In this document: positions 1-52,864 of the stretch, in pieces
Layout of the letters: every line of letters begins with the position of its first letter
Position numbering within the stretch: the first letter of the stretch is position 1
Source: Vitrella brassicaformis CCMP3155
Lineage: Eukaryota > Protista > Chromerida
Length of the DNA stretch: 52,864 bases
Direction of reading: 5' to 3'
NCBI GenBank assembly: GCA_001179505.1
Contig: CDMY01000552.1
Coordinates: forward strand, 1-52,864
Translations under genes and position numbers: made by a program
Notes under the pieces: generated by a model
Database searches by the model: none
Told to the model about the DNA's origin: nothing
What the model saw: the letters and a program-made list of their open reading frames with translations, nothing else

Positions 1-1534
1 CAGAGTGGCCGTCCGCTGCCGGCTCAGCATCGGCTGCCGCTGATGGGTGTGCCTCCGTCGGCTCTCAGCGACCCGAGGGCGTCAATGCCGAGTTGAGCAG
101 CGGCAGTCCAGCCGCCGTGGCCTTGTCGTTATCGCCCGGCAGTCCTTCTGATGACTCTGCGTGGGTGAGGGGCATGGAGGCTGCTTGGTCTGAGTGGGAG
201 ACAAAGCGGGGCAATGACACGATGAGGCAGCAGGAGGGTGATGGAGCAGCATTGGGCGATCCCGCACGCGCCATGGCCTTAGAGCAGAAGCGGCAGGCTG
301 TCAAGAGATTGCAGGAGTAAGATGGGCGGCTGGGTGAAAGGGTGGCACTTTCAACGCAACATTGTGTGTGTGTGTCTGTCTTGGGATGCTTGTGTAGGTT
401 GAGTGGTGAGTTGGATGGCAAGTTGGCGGCCATCGCCTCGCTGGAGAAGCGCAAAGCCAAACTCATACACGAGAAGGAAGCCGCCATGCGCAACGCACCC
501 AAGTGAGACGAACCGCACACACACACACACACACACACAGGGCGGAAGGAACCTTGACGCACCTTGTGTCGTGTGTGTTTATGTGTTTCAGGTCTGTTGA
601 CGAGTTGGATGAGGTAGTTCGTGCGGGCGGCGTTGAGGGCATCCGGCAGTTCTCGGCTGAGGCCGAGACTGAGAAGGCCGCCCTGCAGCCCATCTACGAC
701 GCCGCACTCGCCAAGATCCAACAACTCAGCAGCGGATCGACAGCAGTGGAAGAGCCACACACAGAGAGGGAGCAGGGCACGGCCGGTGACGGACCAGCGG
801 CAGCAACGGCGTCGTCCTCGGCTGATGCGGGTGGCCCCTGTGGGCCGCTGGAGGAGGGCAGCTCGTCGGGTGCTGGTGTAGCTGATGACATTGGCGGTTT
901 GCGGCTCGACGAGCAGCTGGCAGCACTCACGCAGCGCATCTCAGAGTGAGCATAGAACAGCGGGGATTCTCACTCCGCCATATGTGTGTCTGCGTGTGTG
1001 GCATTCAGGGTCGAGCAGCGGTTGGTAGCGGTGAGCTGGATCGTCGGCTGCGGTGCCTCTCGGATGAGGTGGGGAAGCTCCAGTCGCGTGTCGATGCCAT
1101 CAAGGACGACAATCGCAACAGGTACGTCCACGCACACACACATAAGCTGTCCATCTCTATCCATCTGTGTGGGGGTGTGCAGGCCTTCGGTGACTTGCCT
1201 TTCGTCCATCCACACGGTGGCCGACGCCACAGCCTTCATCGCCCGGGTCATTGCCCGCATTCAGCAGCTCGACGGGCTCGTCATTCGGGCGCACCAGGAG
1301 GAGAATCGGCAGCTCCAGCGGCGCATCGACGACAGGGAGGACGATGAGTCGTGTGCGGTGTGCCACGACGGGCAGCGGACGGTGGTGCTCATCGGCAAGG
1401 CGCCGTCCACCTGCCGCCACCGATGTCTGTGTGTCGCCTGCTGGCGCAAGAGCTTTGCGCCGGGGCGGGGCAACACACAGTGCCCCATCTGCAGAAGCGA
1501 GATTGACTACAGGAAGTCGGGGCCCACCATTTAG
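1..1534 (+). CDS. 3' part of a RING-finger (C3HC4, IAP/MDM2-like spacing) E3 ligase gene; paralog of the gene at 47588-51222; 5' end lies outside the window
   Basis: Exons about <1-316, 398-502, 592-945, 1029-1121, 1183-1534 join in frame through GT-AG introns. They give a coiled coil (ELDRRLRCLSDEVGKLQSRVDAIK) then CAVCHDG...CRHRCLCVAC...CPICR; stop TAG at 1532-1534. Confidence 0.85.
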
Positions 1535-38500: not shown

Positions 38501-39082
38501 TATAGAGAGAAAGGTGGAGACAACGGTGTGGGGTGTAGGTCGAGTGCGATAGTGAGAGAAGGAATTCAGGCTGTCTATACGTGCGAAGTCGAGTTTGTCC
38601 ATGTACAACGAACGAGGTGTACGTATACAAGCAGCCTGTGTAGAAGGGGTAGCACTCTCACTCGCTCACTCGTCCGTCCTTTCGGGGGGCGTGCATAGCA
38701 TGGATTGATGCAGAGCGATCTCGATGGATGTTGGAATGAGTGAACTCTGTGTGTGTGCGTGATCGATTGAGTCTGCCTGCGTGTCTGCCTGTTTTGCTTG
38801 CAATGTGTGTTTGCCCGGTCAGGTGGAGGCAGCGATGTGCGGGATGCCTTGTGCTGCTTGGTGCTTGCCCGTGTATGCACGCACAGATGCATACATACAT
38901 GGATGGATCCGTCAATTCATTCCATCATCGTCTGTAACGCCCACAAGGGTGCACATCCAGGCTGGCTAACGGGTGATGGATGCATCTTATCGCTTCCCGC
39001 TGTGCACATACATCACATACATGCACCCAGACAGACAGACAGACAGACAGACAGACACCCAGCCAACCAACCAGTCATCTGT

Positions 39083-42000
39083 TCAGCTAAGCTGCAATGC
39101 ATTCTCTCCAAAGACAGCGAGGAAGCTCCTCGGATGAGTCAATGGGTGGTGGTCGACCCACCAGAAGTGGTCGACCCACCAGAAGCATCCCCTTGGGATG
39201 CAGTGCCGATTGCAGCAGGCCTCCATCTCTTTACGGATGGCCATCTCTCGACGGATGGCCGACTCTCTCGGGTCGTATGGGAACGAGCTCACGTGCACCG
39301 TCAGCCTGCGAAAGCGATTCGCCTTGAGAAGGGGGTCGAGGACACCTCGAAAGAAGGGCTTGACGGCAGCTTCGGTGTGCGATAAATGAAGTGCATACAC
39401 ACAGACAGATACGACACATACCCACACCCGACACCCAATCAATTATTGCGGATGGCAGGTGACATGATGCAGACGTACAGCTGATCTTGACGTCGATCCT
39501 GTCGATTTTGGGGAGCTCGTCGGCCCAGTCGCGCCAGGTGAGACCCTCCTGGGACGGCTCGTGCGATGCCAAACTGATGGACACCTTTGTGGTCTCGACC
39601 TCCCCGTCCCTCCCTATCGCCCTCAGCACCTCAAACACAGGTCCCTCCCGGCCATCCAGCCGCTGCAGTCTTGTTGCCTTCTCTGCCAGTACAGCACCAG
39701 CACCCCCTGCCAAGTCTCCTACTATGCTGATCTTGCGCAGAGAGGGGAGGCGAGGCTGAGGGATGAGCGACGAGACGAGGCCCCGAAGGGCCGCCGCTCG
39801 CTCAGCAGCCGAGAGGGCCTCGAAAGCAGGCCCCGGATTCCACCCCGGGCCCGCGGGCACGAAATTGCCATAAACAACCATCTCCGTGGTGGAGAATGTC
39901 AGGCTGTCGGCGACGCGTTGGACTGCAGGCCGGACGGCGCCCCGCTGGTGGTAGTCGAGCAGCTGCTCGGTGGTGACGTAGATCTCCATCTTCCGAGTCC
40001 TCTGAGCCAGGTGCTGGAATGTCTCTATGAGGAGGGTAGAAGGGTCGTCCGGCACGTCGAGAAGGGAGTTGATCTGGAATATGTTGGCGTGGAGCATGAA
40101 ATAACCTCTGCTGGGTGGGGGCGTCCTGAAGGCGATGATGGGGCCTCCGAATGCCTTGTGGAAGGAATCGAGTCCGCCGACAAGGTCGCGCAGAGCGGGC
40201 CCGTAGAGGACGATCGGACGAAGCTCGACATCGACGTGGTCGAGGGACAGACACCCATGCTGATGCAACACATCCTGTCAATGCAATCACACACAGACAC
40301 TTTGAGATGACCAACAAGACCCTCACAGGCAATGGGTTTTCCCTCCCAGACGTACCTTGAGATGTGTCAGCCCGATACTAGGATGAGGCGCTAGCACTGC
40401 ACCACCGTCTGTCATCAGCAGGGTGCCGATGGTCCTCAGGCCGGCCAGCCGCCCCTCCTCCCCCTCTGCTGCCCGCTGGATCATCGACAGGGCATCCACC
40501 AAGGGGTCAGGTGCCATCGTCACCACTAGCTCCTGGAGCCGCTCGGATGTCTGGATGATCTTGCCCAGTGTCGCCACGTCCAGGCGGTCTCGATCGTGCT
40601 TCATCACAGCTGTCTCGGTCACCGTGTCGAGTGCCGGCATGCGCCACTCTCGGTCGGCCATCGGGCGATGCTCCTTGTCCAGGCCGGTGATGCTCCTGAC
40701 GGCTGGCAGATAGGCCGATGCGGGGGAGGGACGGGAGGGCAGCAGGGAAAGGGCCTTGTTGACGGCCGCCCTCTCCTTCATTGACTCAGCATCAGGCCGG
40801 GCACGCTGAGGAGGAGTATGTGGTGGCTGCCCGGCAGGGCGGAGGGGGCCCCGCTCGGCGTCATCATCGTCCTCCTCAAACCAGACGTCCCCATCGTCCT
40901 CGTCTGGCTCGAAGGTGATGCTCTCGAGTGAGCCCTCAGGTATGGGCCGCCCCGACTTCCGTCGCCCCGCCACCAGTGCTGCCCGCGCCTCTGCGTGGCC
41001 CTCCACGATGCCGATGACGACACGAAGACACCATGCCGCCAGCAGGCGGGGATGGCGCACTGTGATGCTCCTGAGGTGCGGCAGCCGTCTGCCCCACTCG
41101 TAAGCCGCCGCGAAGGAGAGCTTCTCGAAGAAGGTCGCACTGGCGTCGTTGTAGTCGATGATGAGGTCAGTGTAGTTGACGGCCAGCACCTCCCACACTC
41201 GAGTGTCGACGGGCGTGAGCGAAGCGCCTGCCGCAGCAGCGAGGAGGTCTAGCGGCAGCAACGCCAACGTCGAAGCCAGCACGTCATACTGAGTGACGGA
41301 AGACGGACCCAAGACACACACCGAGGAGGTCGAAAGGTGGAGTTTGGTATTTGTCGTGTATCTCCCTGCCTGTCTGCCTGGTTGCCTCACGTACCGGTAT
41401 GGAGGCGAAGGCGAGCAAGGGCTGCCTGAGACCCGGCTCCCTACTGGTGCTACTGCTCGGCTCATCTGTGGTCTCGTCTCCAACTAAGCGTCTCTCCTGC
41501 GAGCAATGACGACCAAAAAATACAATGACGTATGTGTGAATGCATGTGCGAGTTGGTGCCTTCACCTGGCCGCCGTCCTCCCGCGATGCACCCTTAGAAA
41601 CAGCCTGAAGCACACACACACGCATTGCATTCCCACGCGGCACACGCGGGTATTGTGCATTCATCCAGACATGAACACACCTTTGCCTTGTTGACCAAGA
41701 TGGCGATCTCCAGGGGACTACTCTCCTGAGCACATCCATCGGATCAGACAGCAAGAACAGTGAAGCTTTCTTCCCGCCTGACCCCACCCACTTACCGTCC
41801 GCAGATATAGTGCGATTTTGGTCTGTGCTATCTGGATCAGACGGGGGATGTGGAGGTAGCTGGCCGCCTGATGGAGCCAACACGCAGGAGGCAAGCTGGC
41901 TGGTAGTCTGGACTGCCAAGAGAGAGTGTGCTTTGTGTGTGTGCGTGTGTACCTTGACGACGTCGCACAGCGTTTCCCAGTCCATCTCCTCCACACAGGT

Positions 42001-42429
42001 GACATCCCACTCGTCGCCAAAGACCTGCAATGCACACGACACACGCAGGCAGACCCCATAACCACGCCTGCTGTGTTGGTGTGCCTTGCGCTCATGGTCG
42101 GTCAGACGCACCTCTTCTACAGTGTTTACTGTTGTGATGAGTGTTTCTTGGATGGGCTGAGGCGCCTCGTTGTCATCATCGTGATGCTCAGACACGTACT
42201 TACACCACTGCATGACCTTCTCCAAGATGGCTCTGCGGATGTTGTGGAGAGGCACCTCACCGCCGCCCTCGCCATCTGATCAGCACATGGATGGATGGAT
42301 GGATTCAGGCAGAGATCAGCACCTCTCACCGGGTTCTTCCAGAATGTTGTCGATGGTTTTCGATAAGCGAGCGGCTTTCTCCTCCACCTCTACCGCTCCA
42401 TCCTCAGCCTGCAGCCGCACCACCGTCAT
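39083..42429 (-). CDS. Skp1-like domain fused to an F-box-like motif and a large C-terminal (possibly divergent LRR-like) domain, copy 1, apparently intact
   Basis: ATG at 42429: MTVVRLQAEDGAVEVEEKAARLSKTIDNILEEP|DGEGGGEVPLHNIRRAILEKVMQWCKY..VEE|VFGDEWDVTCVEEMDWETLCDVVK|AASYLHIPRLIQIAQTKIALYLRT|ESSPLEIAILVNKAK|AVSKGASREDGGQ|ERR..LLAFASIP|YDVLASTLALLPLDLL.., continuing into the 40323 and 39231 ORFs. The junctions checked are GT-AG and frame-compatible; the last exon is less certain. Confidence 0.8.
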
Positions 42430-42720
42430 GATGACCGCTGCAGACAGCTACGCGGCCCTCTTCCCTTTGCCGCACGGAATTTGCGACGTCACATTCCCTT
42501 CGCCGAGCCGCACGGAGTTTGCCACGCGCTGCGGCGATGGACTAGGGAGCCGCAAGATAAAGGAAACGAGGGAGGATTCAGACCTTCCCTCCACCCCGAT
42601 CCGATCTCGCAAACCAAGGGGGGGGAACAGGGTGTTTTGTGAATTGTGAGGCCACCTGAAGGTAGCCAATGGTGAATGACACGCTGTGGGGACAGTGCAA
42701 AGGAAAGCAATTCATCCATT
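41064..42720. repeat. Inverted duplication; partner at about 51340-52864 (runs off the window end)
   Basis: Exons, several introns and about 290 bp of upstream DNA align in reverse complement, e.g. 42661-42720 vs 51338-51397, and 41064-41290 vs 52640-52864. Confidence 0.93.
42663..42672. promoter_or_regulatory. CCAAT-box-like element conserved upstream of both Skp1-fusion copies (partner 51386-51395)
   Basis: tagccaatgg / ccattggcta is retained in both diverged upstream regions, about 235 and 170 bp before the ATGs. Function is inferred. Confidence 0.35.
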
Positions 42721-43447
42721 CCCTCGTGTGGGCCATCGTTCTCGGGGGAATACGTAACAACCTTTCATCCATCATTCGAGCATACTCAGCATAGAGAAAA
42801 GTCGTGAAGTGTTCACCCATGCAGTGCGAAGCTCAGCACTTCTTAAGGAATGGATCTCTTTTGGCTGCGACTCATTCACAAGTGCGTGGTGCTGCTGCTG
42901 CTGGTGCTGCAGCTGTAGCTGGCCTATTCCCATACTTACCAGACAGTGCGCGACCGTATTCCGACCTTGAGGTACTTACGTGTCGTAGACTAGCTTTGAC
43001 GGCTATTTTGTGCTTTGACGGCTATTTGTTGACGTATTAATTTTATTTGTAAGGACAGAGTGCGTTGGCCGCTGCAAGGCTTTCAGCCATTCATGCCGAC
43101 ACAGACCAGTAGACACGTACAATAAATGTCTTCCTACAGATCAATGACCACTGGAAGAGATGGCGGACCTAGCGAGAAATAGACAAGTACACGGCGGAGG
43201 TATGCAAATAGACAAATAAACGGAGAAACAGGAAAACTGGAACAGGGTGCAAGTCACCTACACACTGCACTTTACGAAGCAAGCTCCCTCCCTCCCTCCC
43301 TACCTACCACTCCTTACCTCTTCCTCCCTCCCTCCCGAGACACGTATCCACGGCCTGATTGTTTCTACACGTCAGCACGTCAAGATCGGTCGCATGACTG
43401 CGACCAATTCCCACGCCCAGCAATCCCTCTCTGCCTACATGCATCGG

Positions 43448-51561: not shown

Positions 51562-52864
51562 ATGACGGTGGTGCGGCTGCAGGCTGAGGATGGAGCGTAG
51601 AGGTGGAGGAGAAAGCCGCTCGCGTATCGAAAACCATCGACAGCATTCTGCAAGGTGAGGAAGCGACGAAGCCAAGATGCATCATGCACTTCCTGATTTG
51701 TCCATCCATTCATTTGTCTGTCAGATGACGACAGCAGCAGTGAGATCCCTCTCCACAGTATCCGCAGAGCCACGCTGCAAAAGGTGATGCAGTGGTGTGG
51801 GCGTCACGCCGATGAGGACAGCGAAGGCGGCACGCCTTTGGCCACGCCAGAAACACTGACGACAGCGAAGGCTACAGAGGAGGTGCGTGCGTCTGGCCGG
51901 CCACCATGTGCGCTAAACACACCAACACAGCACGCGTGGTTATGGGGTCTGCCTGCGTGTGCATTGTAGGTCCTAGACGATGAGTGGGATACCACCTATG
52001 TGGAGGAGATGAGCTGGGAAACGCTGTGCGATGTCATCAAGGTGGGTGTGGTGTGACACGTGTCACAAGACCATCCATCCATCCATCCATCGGACTACCA
52101 GCCAGCCAGCCTGCCTCCTGCGTGTTGGCTCCATCAGGCGGCCAGCTACCTCCACATCCCCCGTCTGATCCAGATAGCCCAGATCAAAATCGCACTATAT
52201 CTGCGCGCGGTATGCGGCAGCCAAGCAGGAGAGCTCACACCACATTAGGTGGTGATCGTCACGGTGGTGCTCTGCGTGCAGGAGAGTAGCCCTTCGGAGA
52301 TCGCCATCTTGGTCAACAAGGCGAAGGTGTGTGTGCGTGCACGGGAAGGCACACATACACACTCATTCGCCTGTGGGAATGAATGTCTGCTCAGGCTGTT
52401 TCTGTGGGGGCGTCGCCAGAAGATGGCGGCCAGGTGAAGAGATCGGCCGAGGGCGAGGCCAAGGGGGCGTCGGGCAGCGGCAGGCAGCCGGGTCTCAGGC
52501 AGCCCTTGCTCGCCTTCGCCTCCATACCGGTACGTGCGTAAAGCAATCAGGCAGGCAGGCAGGCAGATACACGACACGCGCCCAAACTCGTCCTTCGATC
52601 TGCTCGGTGTGTGTCTTGGGTCCGTCTTCCGTCACTCAGTATGACGTGCTGGCTTTGACGTTGGCCTTGCTGCCCCTAGACCTCCTCTCTGCTGCGGCAG
52701 GCGCCTCGCTCACGCCCGTCGACACTCGAGAGTGGGAGGTGCTGGCCGCCAACTACACCCACCTCATCATCGACCACGACGACACCAGTGCGACCTTCTT
52801 CGAGAAGCTCTCCTTCGCGGCGGCTTACGAGTGGGGCAGACGGCTGCCGCACCTCAGGAGCATC
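51562..52864 (+). pseudogene. Skp1/F-box-like fusion copy 2 with a 1-nt deletion in exon 1; continues beyond the window
   Basis: ATG at 51562; gatggagcgtagagg vs gatggagcggtagagg in copy 1 gives TAG at 51598-51600. Downstream exons are intact: EIPLHSIRRATLQKVMQWC, DEWDTTYVEEMSWETLCDVIK|AASYLHIPRLI, LLAFASIP|YDVLALTLALLPLDLL. Confidence 0.7.

What the first reader, a model, noticed from the sequence alone, without database searches (positions are those of the whole stretch)
39083..42429. Single-chain Skp1 + F-box-like + substrate-domain protein: a candidate self-contained SCF adaptor
Seen: Skp1-like exons (VPLHNIRRAILEKVMQWC; DEWD..; AASYLHIPRL) do not end in a stop. They splice in frame through a short linker into FASIP|YDVLASTLALLPLDLL, which fits the F-box pattern (LP.E.L..I...L....L), and then into about 700 more residues. 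The diverged second copy keeps the same fusion frame with a different linker. Established: Skp1 and F-box proteins are normally separate, Skp1 binds F-boxes with its C-terminal helices, and Cul3 BTB adaptors merge both roles in one chain. Here the last Skp1 helix (..EEEQIRREN.W) is missing. Inference: the Skp1 domain clasps its own F-box, giving a Cul1 adaptor that needs no free Skp1 and may escape F-box exchange. I know no canonical example, but have not searched.
Basis: partly seen in the sequence, partly recalled or inferred. Interest (0 to 1): 0.85.

Follow-up and report, generated by a model that had tools for sequence, protein, structure and literature searches.

The report
Natural Skp1 fused to F-box/LRR receptor
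An alga (Vitrella brassicaformis) transcribes a gene whose single protein chain joins a Skp1-like adaptor domain to a divergent F-box plus leucine-rich-repeat receptor, two parts of the SCF ubiquitin ligase that are normally separate proteins; I found no published natural example, and its function is untested.

Summary
Window 39083-42429 (minus strand) is a 10-exon gene of Vitrella brassicaformis CCMP3155 (CEM22146.1, 847 aa). All nine GT-AG introns I modelled appear as joints in spliced contigs of four public runs, so the Skp1 exons run in frame into the downstream protein.

- **Skp1 part:** residues 1-150 are a true Skp1 relative (Pfam Skp1_POZ E 7.7e-12; human SKP1 2-135, E 1e-11). It stops after helix H7, so H8 is absent.
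- **Receptor part:** a 40-50 residue linker leads into three short helices with an LP.D.L...W pattern, then an LRR solenoid (AF2 pLDDT 82, pTM 0.81). The best fold matches are F-box/LRR proteins (MAX2/D3, TIR1, FBXL2/20, Skp2). Only those matches cover the three N-terminal helices.
- **Weak point:** Pfam F-box profiles do not reach significance.
- **Age of the fusion:** a second locus on another scaffold (CEL94714.1, about 43% identical) has the same fusion with the same intron positions. The fusion is therefore old and maintained.
- **Copy 2:** the inverted copy at 51562-52864 is transcribed but has a premature stop at codon 13.

Intramolecular Skp1:F-box docking and cullin binding are plausible but not shown. 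"Escape from exchange" is doubtful. The scan flagged the same kind of fusion on another piece of this genome (s1-235847). Verdict: new variant of a known kind, interest about 0.6.

The parts
42330..42429 (-). Exon 1: start codon (42429-42427) and the Skp1 N-terminal strand/helix (aa 1-33).
   Evidence: Pfam Skp1_POZ E 7.5e-5 on this exon alone. Joint 42275/42330 in X6 and X7. Exon model reproduces P0001.
42112..42275 (-). Exon 2: the Skp1 VPLHNI...VMQWC core and the acidic loop (aa 34-88).
   Evidence: Pfam Skp1_POZ. Joint 42022/42110. Alignment to human SKP1.
41953..42024 (-). Exon 3: Skp1 DEWD...TLCDVVK (aa 89-112).
   Evidence: Joint 41866/41952 in all four runs. Human SKP1 alignment.
41796..41867 (-). 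Exon 4: Skp1 helices H5-H6, AASYLHIPRL... (aa 113-136).
   Evidence: Joint 41724/41795 in X6. 92% identical in copy 2.
41681..41725 (-). Exon 5: Skp1 H7, SSPLEIAILVNKAK (aa 137-151). This is the last Skp1-homologous segment. The Pro of the TPEEI motif is kept.
   Evidence: The alignment with human SKP1 ends here, at residue 135 of 163. Joint 41603/41680 in all runs.
41566..41604 (-). Exon 6: first linker exon (aa 152-164).
   Evidence: Joint 41495/41565 in X2 and X6; this intron is specific to copy 1.
41395..41496 (-). Exon 7: linker, ending in QPLLAFASIP (aa 165-198). It carries the 'IP' that opens the F-box-like motif and has no in-frame ATG.
   Evidence: X2 contig 11 (zero mismatches) runs 16 nt past the donor without matching the intron.
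41175..41288 (-). Start of exon 8: three F-box-like helices (aa 199-236; YDVLASTL, LDLLAAA, TRVWEVLAVN).
   Evidence: AF2 helices 14-21, 26-32 and 42-51 of model 186-847. They align with the F-box of Skp2, FBXL2/20 and TIR1.
40356..41174 (-). Rest of exon 8: first half of the LRR-like solenoid with an acidic insert (aa 237-509).
   Evidence: AF2 alternating strand/helix pattern, pLDDT mostly above 90. Conserved in about 70 Vitrella paralogs.
39479..40274 (-). Exon 9: second half of the LRR-like solenoid.
   Evidence: Joints 40273/40355 and 39369/39479. AF2 model.
39083..39369 (-). Exon 10: C-terminal tail and stop codon. It contains a tandem duplicated 18-nt unit (FWWVDH twice).
   Evidence: RNA contigs are continuous over 39078-39369. 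The deposited model adds a further intron here that these contigs do not show.
51562..52864 (+). Copy 2: inverted paralog with the same Skp1-to-F-box fusion, cut by the scaffold end. It has a premature TAG at 51598-51600.
   Evidence: Spliced copy-2 contigs bridge exon 1 to the F-box exon (X1 record 6 and X7 record 25).

Best explanation
SHOWN: this is an expressed 10-exon gene of Vitrella brassicaformis encoding one 847-aa chain. It has a Skp1-like domain (BTB/POZ core plus helices H5-H7, with H8 deleted), a 40-50 residue low-complexity linker, a divergent three-helix F-box-like element, and an LRR solenoid of about 600 aa. The F-box-like element and solenoid together form the conserved module of a Vitrella-specific family of at least 70 paralogs. 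The fusion arose once. It predates the split of two loci that are now about 43% identical and share every intron position from Skp1 exon 1 to the intron that cuts the F-box 'LP|xDxL'. INFERRED: the protein acts as a self-contained SCF-type substrate receptor. The F-box helices pack intramolecularly on Skp1 H5-H7, with the covalent linker replacing the clamping role of H8. The POZ core docks on a Cul1-type cullin and the LRR binds substrate. The module therefore needs no free Skp1 and is made in fixed 1:1 stoichiometry. It would still be displaced from the cullin as a unit by CAND1-type exchange.
For: - Gene and transcript: exon model equals P0001; nine spliced joints in four runs; no in-frame start codon in the linker exons.
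- Skp1 identity: Pfam Skp1_POZ 45.7 bits, E 7.7e-12. All 33 PDB hits are SKP1 or its homologs (ASK1, yeast Skp1), best E 1e-11, P0001 2-143 against human 2-135. The Atlas (ESMFold) model matches a 160-aa Skp1 cluster at TM 0.80.
- F-box/LRR: AF2 pLDDT 82.1, pTM 0.81, three N-terminal helices then a strand/helix solenoid. The Foldseek PDB top 10 are all F-box/LRR proteins solved with Skp1: D3/MAX2 and a plant LRR-F-box ligase. VIA gives Skp2 Z 9.1, model 8..450 against 108..393.
- Discriminating pattern: in AFDB-SwissProt most F-box proteins align from model residue 8-14 onto their own F-box, whereas most other LRR proteins (most NLRs, RNase inhibitor) start at residue 40-53.
- Weaker F-box support: F-box-like is the most frequent Pfam family among the paralogs' N-termini. 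The language-model neighbours are F-box clusters.
- Second locus: P0012/L001 has identical intron positions and phases, and a complete Skp1 start at an upstream ATG. The Skp1 part is 44% identical between loci, against 30% for the LRR part.
- Docking hints: F-box pLDDT rises from 58-80 (F-box modelled alone) to 63-87, mostly 81-87, when Skp1 is present; Skp1 H5-H7 reach 83-88. Structural matches to Skp1 extend to residue 240 in P0001 and 153 in P0012, that is into the F-box helices.
- Engineered precedent: a Skp1-TIR1 fusion served as the auxin-degron receptor in the earlier fission-yeast system (PMC8229956).
Against: - No Pfam F-box hit for this protein. Only 3 of 57 paralog N-termini hit F-box-like, best E 0.014. 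A family profile finds no F-box chain in the PDB.
- Generic LRR proteins score as high as Skp2 in VIA, and TM-scores are low (about 0.2).
- Docking could not be inspected because no coordinates or PAE are returned. The 1-330 model misfolded the POZ core for lack of Skp1 homologs in the alignment.
- Pfam reports no Skp1 C-terminal domain (PF01466) at E<=0.1.
- Positions I recall as Cul1 contacts differ from human (AANYL becomes AASYL, TLFELIL becomes TLCDVVK).
- Copy 2 carries a premature stop, and copy 1 against copy 2 gives dN/dS 0.61.
- No ortholog outside Vitrella was found.
Confidence: 0.55

Rival explanations
1. Cullin-independent Skp1-F-box module. The fused Skp1 domain has lost cullin binding, and the protein acts like non-SCF Skp1 complexes (from my own knowledge: yeast RAVE, Rcy1-Skp1, Ctf13-Skp1). 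In this reading the Skp1 part only stabilises the F-box/LRR scaffold.
For: The Skp1 part is divergent, about 30% identical to human over the aligned stretch. Helix H5, which I recall as the Cul1 contact, is changed (N to S, F to C, L to K). PF01466 is not detected. H8 is deleted at both loci.
Against: The POZ core and the PLxN(I/V) motif are conserved at both loci. The Skp1 part is more conserved between the two loci than the LRR part (44% against 30%). Nothing here tests cullin binding in either direction.
Confidence: 0.2
2. Trans rather than cis pairing. The Skp1 domain of one chain binds the F-box of another chain or of one of the roughly 70 unfused paralogs, while its own F-box binds free Skp1. 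This would give dimers or chains, or a dominant regulator of the family.
For: The linker is long and predicted disordered (pLDDT 50-62), so it does not by itself enforce cis docking. The genome holds many unfused paralogs with the same F-box-like motif.
Against: The effective local concentration of a tethered partner favours cis. At the second locus the linker is only about 20 residues. ESMFold and AF2 models place the F-box helices on the same chain's Skp1 helices.
Confidence: 0.15
3. A decaying or neutral chimeric gene: an accidental exon-shuffling product that is transcribed but has no selected function.
For: Copy 2 has a premature stop at codon 13 yet is transcribed. dN/dS between the two copies is 0.61. 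The family is lineage-specific and fast-evolving.
Against: Copy 1 and the distant locus P0012 both keep long intact reading frames, all intron positions and the Skp1 hallmark motifs at about 43% identity. That is not expected without selection.
Confidence: 0.07
4. Annotation or assembly artefact: two adjacent genes (a truncated Skp1 and an F-box/LRR gene) joined only by read-through or by the gene caller.
For: With the last linker intron retained, an out-of-frame ATG in exon 7 opens a frame that reads into exon 8 (ORF 40323-41483). Logan contigs are short, and no single copy-1 contig spans the whole gene.
Against: The Skp1 exons have no stop codon. Overlapping spliced contigs chain exon 1 to exon 10. 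The F-box 'IP' lies on the upstream exon. The same structure exists at an independent locus.
Confidence: 0.03

Closest known systems
Canonical SCF adaptor/receptor pair: SKP1 with an FBXL-type F-box protein (for example Skp1-Skp2, PDB 1FQV; ASK1-TIR1, 2P1M; ASK1-D3/MAX2)
   Same: The same two building blocks in the same N-to-C logic: a Skp1 BTB/POZ core plus helical extension, and a three-helix F-box directly followed by an LRR solenoid. These are the best fold matches.
   Different: Here the two are one polypeptide. Skp1 helix H8 is deleted and replaced by a 20-50 residue linker. The F-box is too divergent for Pfam. Cullin binding is untested.
Engineered Skp1-TIR1 fusion of the fission-yeast auxin-inducible degron system (described in PMC8229956)
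   Same: Skp1 is fused in one chain to an F-box/LRR receptor. The construct was the working receptor of the earlier degron system in cells, so a single-chain design can be compatible with ligase assembly.
   Different: It is man-made, and full-length Skp1 was used. PMC8229956 states that the fusion limits the efficiency of that system. It is not a natural gene.
BTB-domain Cul3 substrate adaptors (for example SPOP, KLHL proteins)
   Same: One chain provides both the cullin-docking BTB/POZ fold and the substrate-binding domain, with a helical '3-box' after the BTB in the place of an F-box. SPOP BTB/3-box was among the matches to the 1-330 model (weak, Z 5.7).
   Different: The N-terminal domain here is a Skp1 by sequence: all PDB hits are SKP1 or its homologs. 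It is not a generic BTB. The architecture looks like a secondary fusion of a two-subunit module, not descent from the BTB adaptor class.
Other long Skp1-domain proteins (a diatom cluster of about 764 aa with Skp1 plus DUF4116)
   Same: They show that Skp1 can occur as the N-terminal domain of a long protein in protists.
   Different: Most of those members keep the Skp1 C-terminal domain (PF01466 in 80%), and the partner is DUF4116, not an F-box/LRR. No paper holds both terms.

Membership tests
Skp1 family | N-terminal BTB/POZ-fold domain (Pfam PF03931 Skp1_POZ) above the gathering score | tested here: met
   45.7 bits against a cut-off of 21.9, E 7.7e-12, residues 3-60. Exons 1 and 2 also hit separately.
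Skp1 family | C-terminal helical extension H5-H7 that forms the core F-box-binding surface | tested here: inconclusive
   phmmer aligns P0001 96-143 to human SKP1 up to residue 135, including TL..(V/I)..AA.YL and the (T/S)P.EI motif. The Atlas model gives TM 0.80 to a Skp1 cluster. But Pfam PF01466 is not reported at E<=0.1.
Skp1 family | Terminal helix H8 (the ...EEE..R.EN.W tail) | tested here: not met
   The alignment ends at human residue 135 of 163. What follows is the low-complexity linker, both at this locus and at P0012.
Skp1 family | Binds the N-terminal repeat of Cul1 | not testable with these tools
   No complex modelling and no access to coordinates. The Vitrella cullin was not retrieved.
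F-box domain (PF00646 / PF12937) | Significant match to an F-box sequence profile | tested here: not met
   No F-box hit for P0001 or its 174-274 segment at E<=1. Only 3 of 57 paralog segments hit F-box-like (best E 0.014) and 1 hits F-box (E 0.097). A family profile against PDB sequences finds no F-box chain.
F-box domain (PF00646 / PF12937) | Three-helix element of about 40-50 aa with the LP.(E/D)(I/V)L...L...(D)L....W..L pattern, placed directly before the substrate-binding domain | tested here: met
   The motif IPYDVL..TL..LPLDLL...RVWEVL is at aa 197-233. AF2 gives helices 14-21, 26-32 and 42-51. These residues align with the F-boxes of Skp2 (108..), FBXL2 (14..), FBXL20 (27..) and TIR1-like (4..), while most non-F-box LRR hits start at model residue 40-53.
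F-box domain (PF00646 / PF12937) | Binds Skp1 helices H5-H8 | not testable with these tools
   Indirect hints only: a pLDDT rise in the presence of Skp1, and Skp1 structural matches that extend into the F-box helices.
FBXL class (F-box + LRR receptors) | LRR solenoid C-terminal to the F-box | tested here: met
   Alternating strand/helix repeats, pLDDT mostly 85-97. Foldseek E 2e-8 to D3/MAX2; TIR1, COI1 and FBXL2 also match. FBXL2/20/4/8/13 match in SwissProt models. No Pfam LRR model hits.
BTB-Cul3 single-chain adaptors | Generic BTB domain (PF00651) with a 3-box, binding Cul3 | tested here: not met
   Pfam reports Skp1_POZ, not BTB. All sequence hits in the PDB are SKP1 or its homologs. The resemblance is functional (one chain, two roles), not membership.

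The most novel reading that the evidence does not exclude
The Vitrella Skp1-F-box/LRR proteins are a natural class of single-chain cullin substrate receptors. An F-box protein has captured its own Skp1 and discarded helix H8, making the receptor independent of the free Skp1 pool and of H8-linked regulation. This would be a living example of how a two-subunit SCF module can turn into a BTB-like one-chain adaptor.
Probability: 0.35. Interest if true: 0.75.

Novelty: new variant of a known kind. Interest (0 to 1): 0.62.

Why it matters
Skp1 and F-box proteins are treated as obligatorily separate subunits, and their exchangeable pairing is the basis of SCF combinatorics. A naturally fused Skp1-F-box/LRR chain that has been kept at two divergent loci would have three consequences.
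- It shows that evolution has tried the single-chain solution inside the SCF branch, parallel to the BTB adaptors of Cul3.
- It gives a natural counterpart to engineered Skp1-TIR1 degron receptors, and a possible template for compact, Skp1-independent designer receptors.
- It offers a natural experiment on the role of Skp1 helix H8, because the fusion has removed it.
It also labels a family of about 70 'uncharacterised' Vitrella proteins as probable divergent F-box/LRR receptors that profile searches miss. That is relevant to the known difficulty of finding F-box proteins in apicomplexans and their relatives (PMC11570480).

Tried and rejected
- **Homolog searches came back empty.** I searched for other long proteins with a Skp1 N-terminus (search for homologous proteins, region 1-150) and for canonical Skp1s using a 3-sequence profile. 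Both returned only the window's own proteins. The word index missed even the 43%-identical P0012, so these blanks say nothing about other species. They also left me without Skp1 homologs for the AF2 alignment.
- **The AF2 model of residues 1-330 was poor.** It misfolded the POZ core as all-helical (pLDDT 35-72), and its PDB comparison was uninformative apart from weak SPOP BTB/3-box and ASK1 matches. I use only its per-residue confidence.
- **A family profile of the F-box region against PDB sequences** gave only spurious WD40 hits.
- **dN/dS between copy 1 and copy 2** (0.61) is too noisy and mosaic to argue for or against selection. I rely instead on the older P0001/P0012 comparison.
- **I considered and rejected** the retained-intron ORF 40323-41483 as an independent start for the downstream gene, and Elongin C as the identity of the N-terminal domain (no Elongin C chain among the PDB hits).
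- **Technical failures:** one busy call (8), one over-size alignment (19), one wrong exon table (45, corrected in 46) and one failed exon-finder script (67, replaced by reading the sequence).
- **Literature:** four searches for a natural Skp1-F-box fusion found only engineered fusions.
Full report
**What is there.** The window is a complete 52,864-bp scaffold of Vitrella brassicaformis CCMP3155, a photosynthetic relative of apicomplexans. The gene product is deposited as CEM22146.1 / A0A0G4G263, 847 aa, automatically named 'SKP1 component POZ domain-containing protein'. Reading the minus strand and fitting GT-AG introns to that protein gives these exons: 42429-42330, 42275-42112, 42024-41953, 41867-41796, 41725-41681, 41604-41566, 41496-41395, 41288-40356, 40274-39479 and 39369-39083.

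**Transcript evidence.** I laid the contigs of four public runs on 38700-42900. All nine introns appear as precise CT..AC joints (GT..AG on the minus strand), so the runs are cDNA.
- For copy 1, one contig family joins exons 1-2-3 (joints 42275/42330 and 42022/42110). Another joins exons 4-5-6-7 (41724/41795, 41603/41680 and 41495/41565; the last intron exists only in copy 1). A third joins exons 8-9-10 (40273/40355 and 39369/39479).
- The exon 7/8 joint (41288/41395) is listed only for a contig with copy-2 mismatches. For copy 1 the support is indirect: zero-mismatch contigs stop at 41289 and 41395 with 13-16 further letters that do not lie on the intron.
- The Skp1 exons contain no stop codon, and the linker exons contain no in-frame ATG.
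- An alternative frame exists with the last linker intron retained (ORF 40323-41483), but nothing supports it as the main form.
- No single contig spans the whole gene, so full-length cDNA is still desirable.

**The Skp1 part.** Pfam Skp1_POZ matches residues 3-60 at 45.7 bits against a cut-off of 21.9. Against PDB sequences, all 33 hits are SKP1 or its plant, yeast and other homologs, best E 1e-11. P0001 residues 2-143 align to human SKP1 residues 2-135 of 163.
- The two acidic loops sit where Skp1 has its disordered loops.
- The PLxN(I/V), (V)MQWC, DEWD, TL..(V/I)..AA(S)YL and (S/T)P.EI motifs are all present.
- The alignment stops after H7. The H8 tail is replaced by a low-complexity linker. 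Pfam does not report the Skp1 C-terminal domain at E<=0.1.
- The Atlas holds an ESMFold model of the protein. Its residues 1-240 match a 160-aa Skp1 cluster at TM 0.80, normalised by the hit.

**The downstream part.** An exhaustive HMMER search with exon 8 found 76 cluster representatives. Every one that carries a source name is from Vitrella. A few unnamed ENA or JGI contigs and two weak hits are of unknown origin. The shared module covers P0001 residues 186 to about 815. It begins with a motif that reads like a degenerate F-box, for example LSRDELANVFGHLQPWEL, DLPNDVLCLITAFLPL and LCKQW.
- AF2 on residues 186-847 with this family as the alignment gave pLDDT 82.1 and pTM 0.81. The model has three short helices (aa 199-206, 211-217 and 227-236) followed by a regular strand/helix solenoid.
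- The ten best Foldseek matches in the PDB are all F-box/LRR proteins solved with Skp1 (D3/MAX2 and a plant LRR-F-box ligase). COI1, FBXL2 and TIR1 follow lower in the list.
- VIA-align gives Skp2 Z 9.1 (model 8..450 against Skp2 108..393), KDM2B Z 8.4 and TIR1 Z 8.8. Generic LRR proteins score similarly.
- The discriminating observation comes from the SwissProt models. When the hit is an F-box protein (MAX2, TIR1-like, AFB2/3, FBXL2, FBXL20, FBXL8, FBXL13, COI1), the alignment usually starts at model residue 8-14 and at the hit's own F-box; FBXL4 is an exception, starting at 44. When the hit is another LRR protein (most NLRPs, RNase inhibitor, p95), the alignment usually starts at residue 40-53, after the three helices. 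NLRC3, LRRC14 and PRAME are exceptions that start at 9-18.
- Sequence profiles do not confirm an F-box. There is no Pfam hit for this protein. F-box-like is merely the most frequent weak family among 57 paralog N-termini (3 hits, best E 0.014). A family profile finds no F-box chain in the PDB. Language-model neighbours are F-box clusters, but at scores the tool calls leads only.
- My reading is F-box fold and position: yes. F-box homology: probable, not proven.

**The fusion is old.** P0012 (CEL94714.1, scaffold CDMY01000225) is the only other family member with a Skp1 part.
- Its deposited N-terminus is truncated. An in-frame ATG at L001:2941 adds MTLRLQAAGGEVAVD..., which is the missing Skp1 start.
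- Reading its sequence shows that every intron position of the window gene recurs there, apart from the extra linker intron that only copy 1 has. The recurring positions are after exon 1 (also phase 1 there), after ...IEE, after ...CDVIT, after ...FELM, after ...MRKAL, and after the 'LP' that opens the F-box.
- The Skp1 part also ends at the same point, but the linker is only about 20 residues.
- Between the two loci the Skp1 part is 44% identical, the F-box region 49%, and the LRR part 30%.
- One ancestral fusion, followed by duplication and long retention of intact frames, argues for function.

**The second copy in the window.** Copy 2 at 51562-52864 (plus strand, inverted, cut by the scaffold end) is a recent duplicate, about 85% identical at the DNA level.
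- It keeps the frame from exon 2 onward and lacks the 69-nt linker intron.
- It has lost one base in exon 1, giving TAG at 51598-51600, which is codon 13. The same deletion is in the RNA contigs.
- Its transcripts are spliced from exon 1 to the F-box exon.
- It is either decaying or makes an N-terminally truncated product. dN/dS against copy 1 is 0.61 overall and is mosaic.

**Mechanism.** Shown: architecture, expression and conservation. Inferred: the F-box helices pack on H5-H7 of the same chain, and the POZ core docks on a Cul1-type cullin. Three indirect supports exist.
- In the AF2 model of residues 1-330, the F-box blocks rise to pLDDT 63-87 (mostly 81-87), from 58-80 when the F-box was modelled without Skp1. 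Skp1 H5-H7 reach 83-88 although only 3-4 sequences cover them.
- In the Atlas models of both fused proteins, the match to a full Skp1 extends into the F-box helices (to residue 240 in P0001 and 153 in P0012). That is as if those helices lie where H8 lies.
- The earlier fission-yeast auxin degron used an engineered Skp1-TIR1 fusion as its receptor (PMC8229956).
I could not inspect contacts or PAE, could not build a deep Skp1 alignment, and could not test cullin binding.

This does not follow. CAND1 removes whole substrate-receptor modules from Cul1, and its beta-hairpin clashes with Skp1 (PMC5711038). A fused module would therefore still be exchangeable. What it would escape is competition for free Skp1.

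**A side point.** The Pro of the TPEEI motif is kept at both loci. From my own knowledge, this is the residue hydroxylated and glycosylated in Dictyostelium and Toxoplasma Skp1. PMC11570480 states that Vitrella has that pathway's genes.

**Novelty.** Four full-text searches found only engineered Skp1 fusions and no natural Skp1-F-box chain. UniProt's automatic name notes only the POZ domain. The Atlas shows a diatom cluster of about 764-aa proteins with Skp1 plus DUF4116, so long Skp1 fusions as such are not unique. First-stage notes on another piece of this genome (s1-235847) describe the same kind of fusion, probably at the second locus. That is not independent evidence. I rate the finding a new variant of a known kind. 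It is real and conceptually interesting, but functionally untested and so far confined to one alga.

Noticed in passing
window 51562-51600 (+): Copy 2 has a 1-nt deletion relative to copy 1, giving a TAG at codon 13. The same deletion is in the RNA contigs, so a broken or N-terminally truncated paralog is transcribed and spliced.
   Followed up: yes
L001:2941-3033 (scaffold CDMY01000225 of GCA_001179505.1): The deposited protein CEL94714.1 (P0012) starts too late. An upstream in-frame ATG adds the missing Skp1 N-terminal strand (MTLRLQAAGGEVAVD...).
   Followed up: yes
window 39083-39200 (-): The deposited model ends ...WWVDHFCGKR through a tenth intron, but RNA contigs are continuous over 39078-39369. 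An 18-nt unit is tandemly duplicated here (FWWVDH twice). The stop at 39083-39085 is followed by a (GTCT)n microsatellite at 39014-39077, which the read tool skipped.
   Followed up: partly
window 42025-42111 and 41289-41394 (-): Two introns are far more alike between copy 1 and copy 2 (88% and 84%) than the other introns compared over most of their length (48-62%). Exon 2 is the most diverged exon. This could be patchy gene conversion or a conserved intronic element.
   Followed up: no
P0004, P0005, P0007, P0016 (other Vitrella scaffolds): Several paralogs carry the F-box-like N-terminal module twice in one predicted protein, with near-identical copies. These could be tandem duplication or assembly and annotation joins.
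   Followed up: no
window 41681-41725 (-), aa 137-151: The proline of the Skp1 TPEEI motif is kept in both fused proteins (SSPLEI here, KTPSHI at the second locus). From my own knowledge, this is the hydroxylation/glycosylation site in Dictyostelium and Toxoplasma Skp1.
   Followed up: no
ESM Atlas cluster 'SconC protein': A diatom cluster of about 764-aa proteins combines a Skp1 domain with DUF4116 (and KR in 40% of members). This is another natural long Skp1 fusion, and I found no paper holding both terms.
   Followed up: partly
window 42285-42304 and 41361-41384: Short (CATC)n and (CAGG)-rich repeats inside introns attract many unrelated contigs. They show up as loose ends and a spurious 42304-to-38770 joint in the read table.
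   Followed up: no
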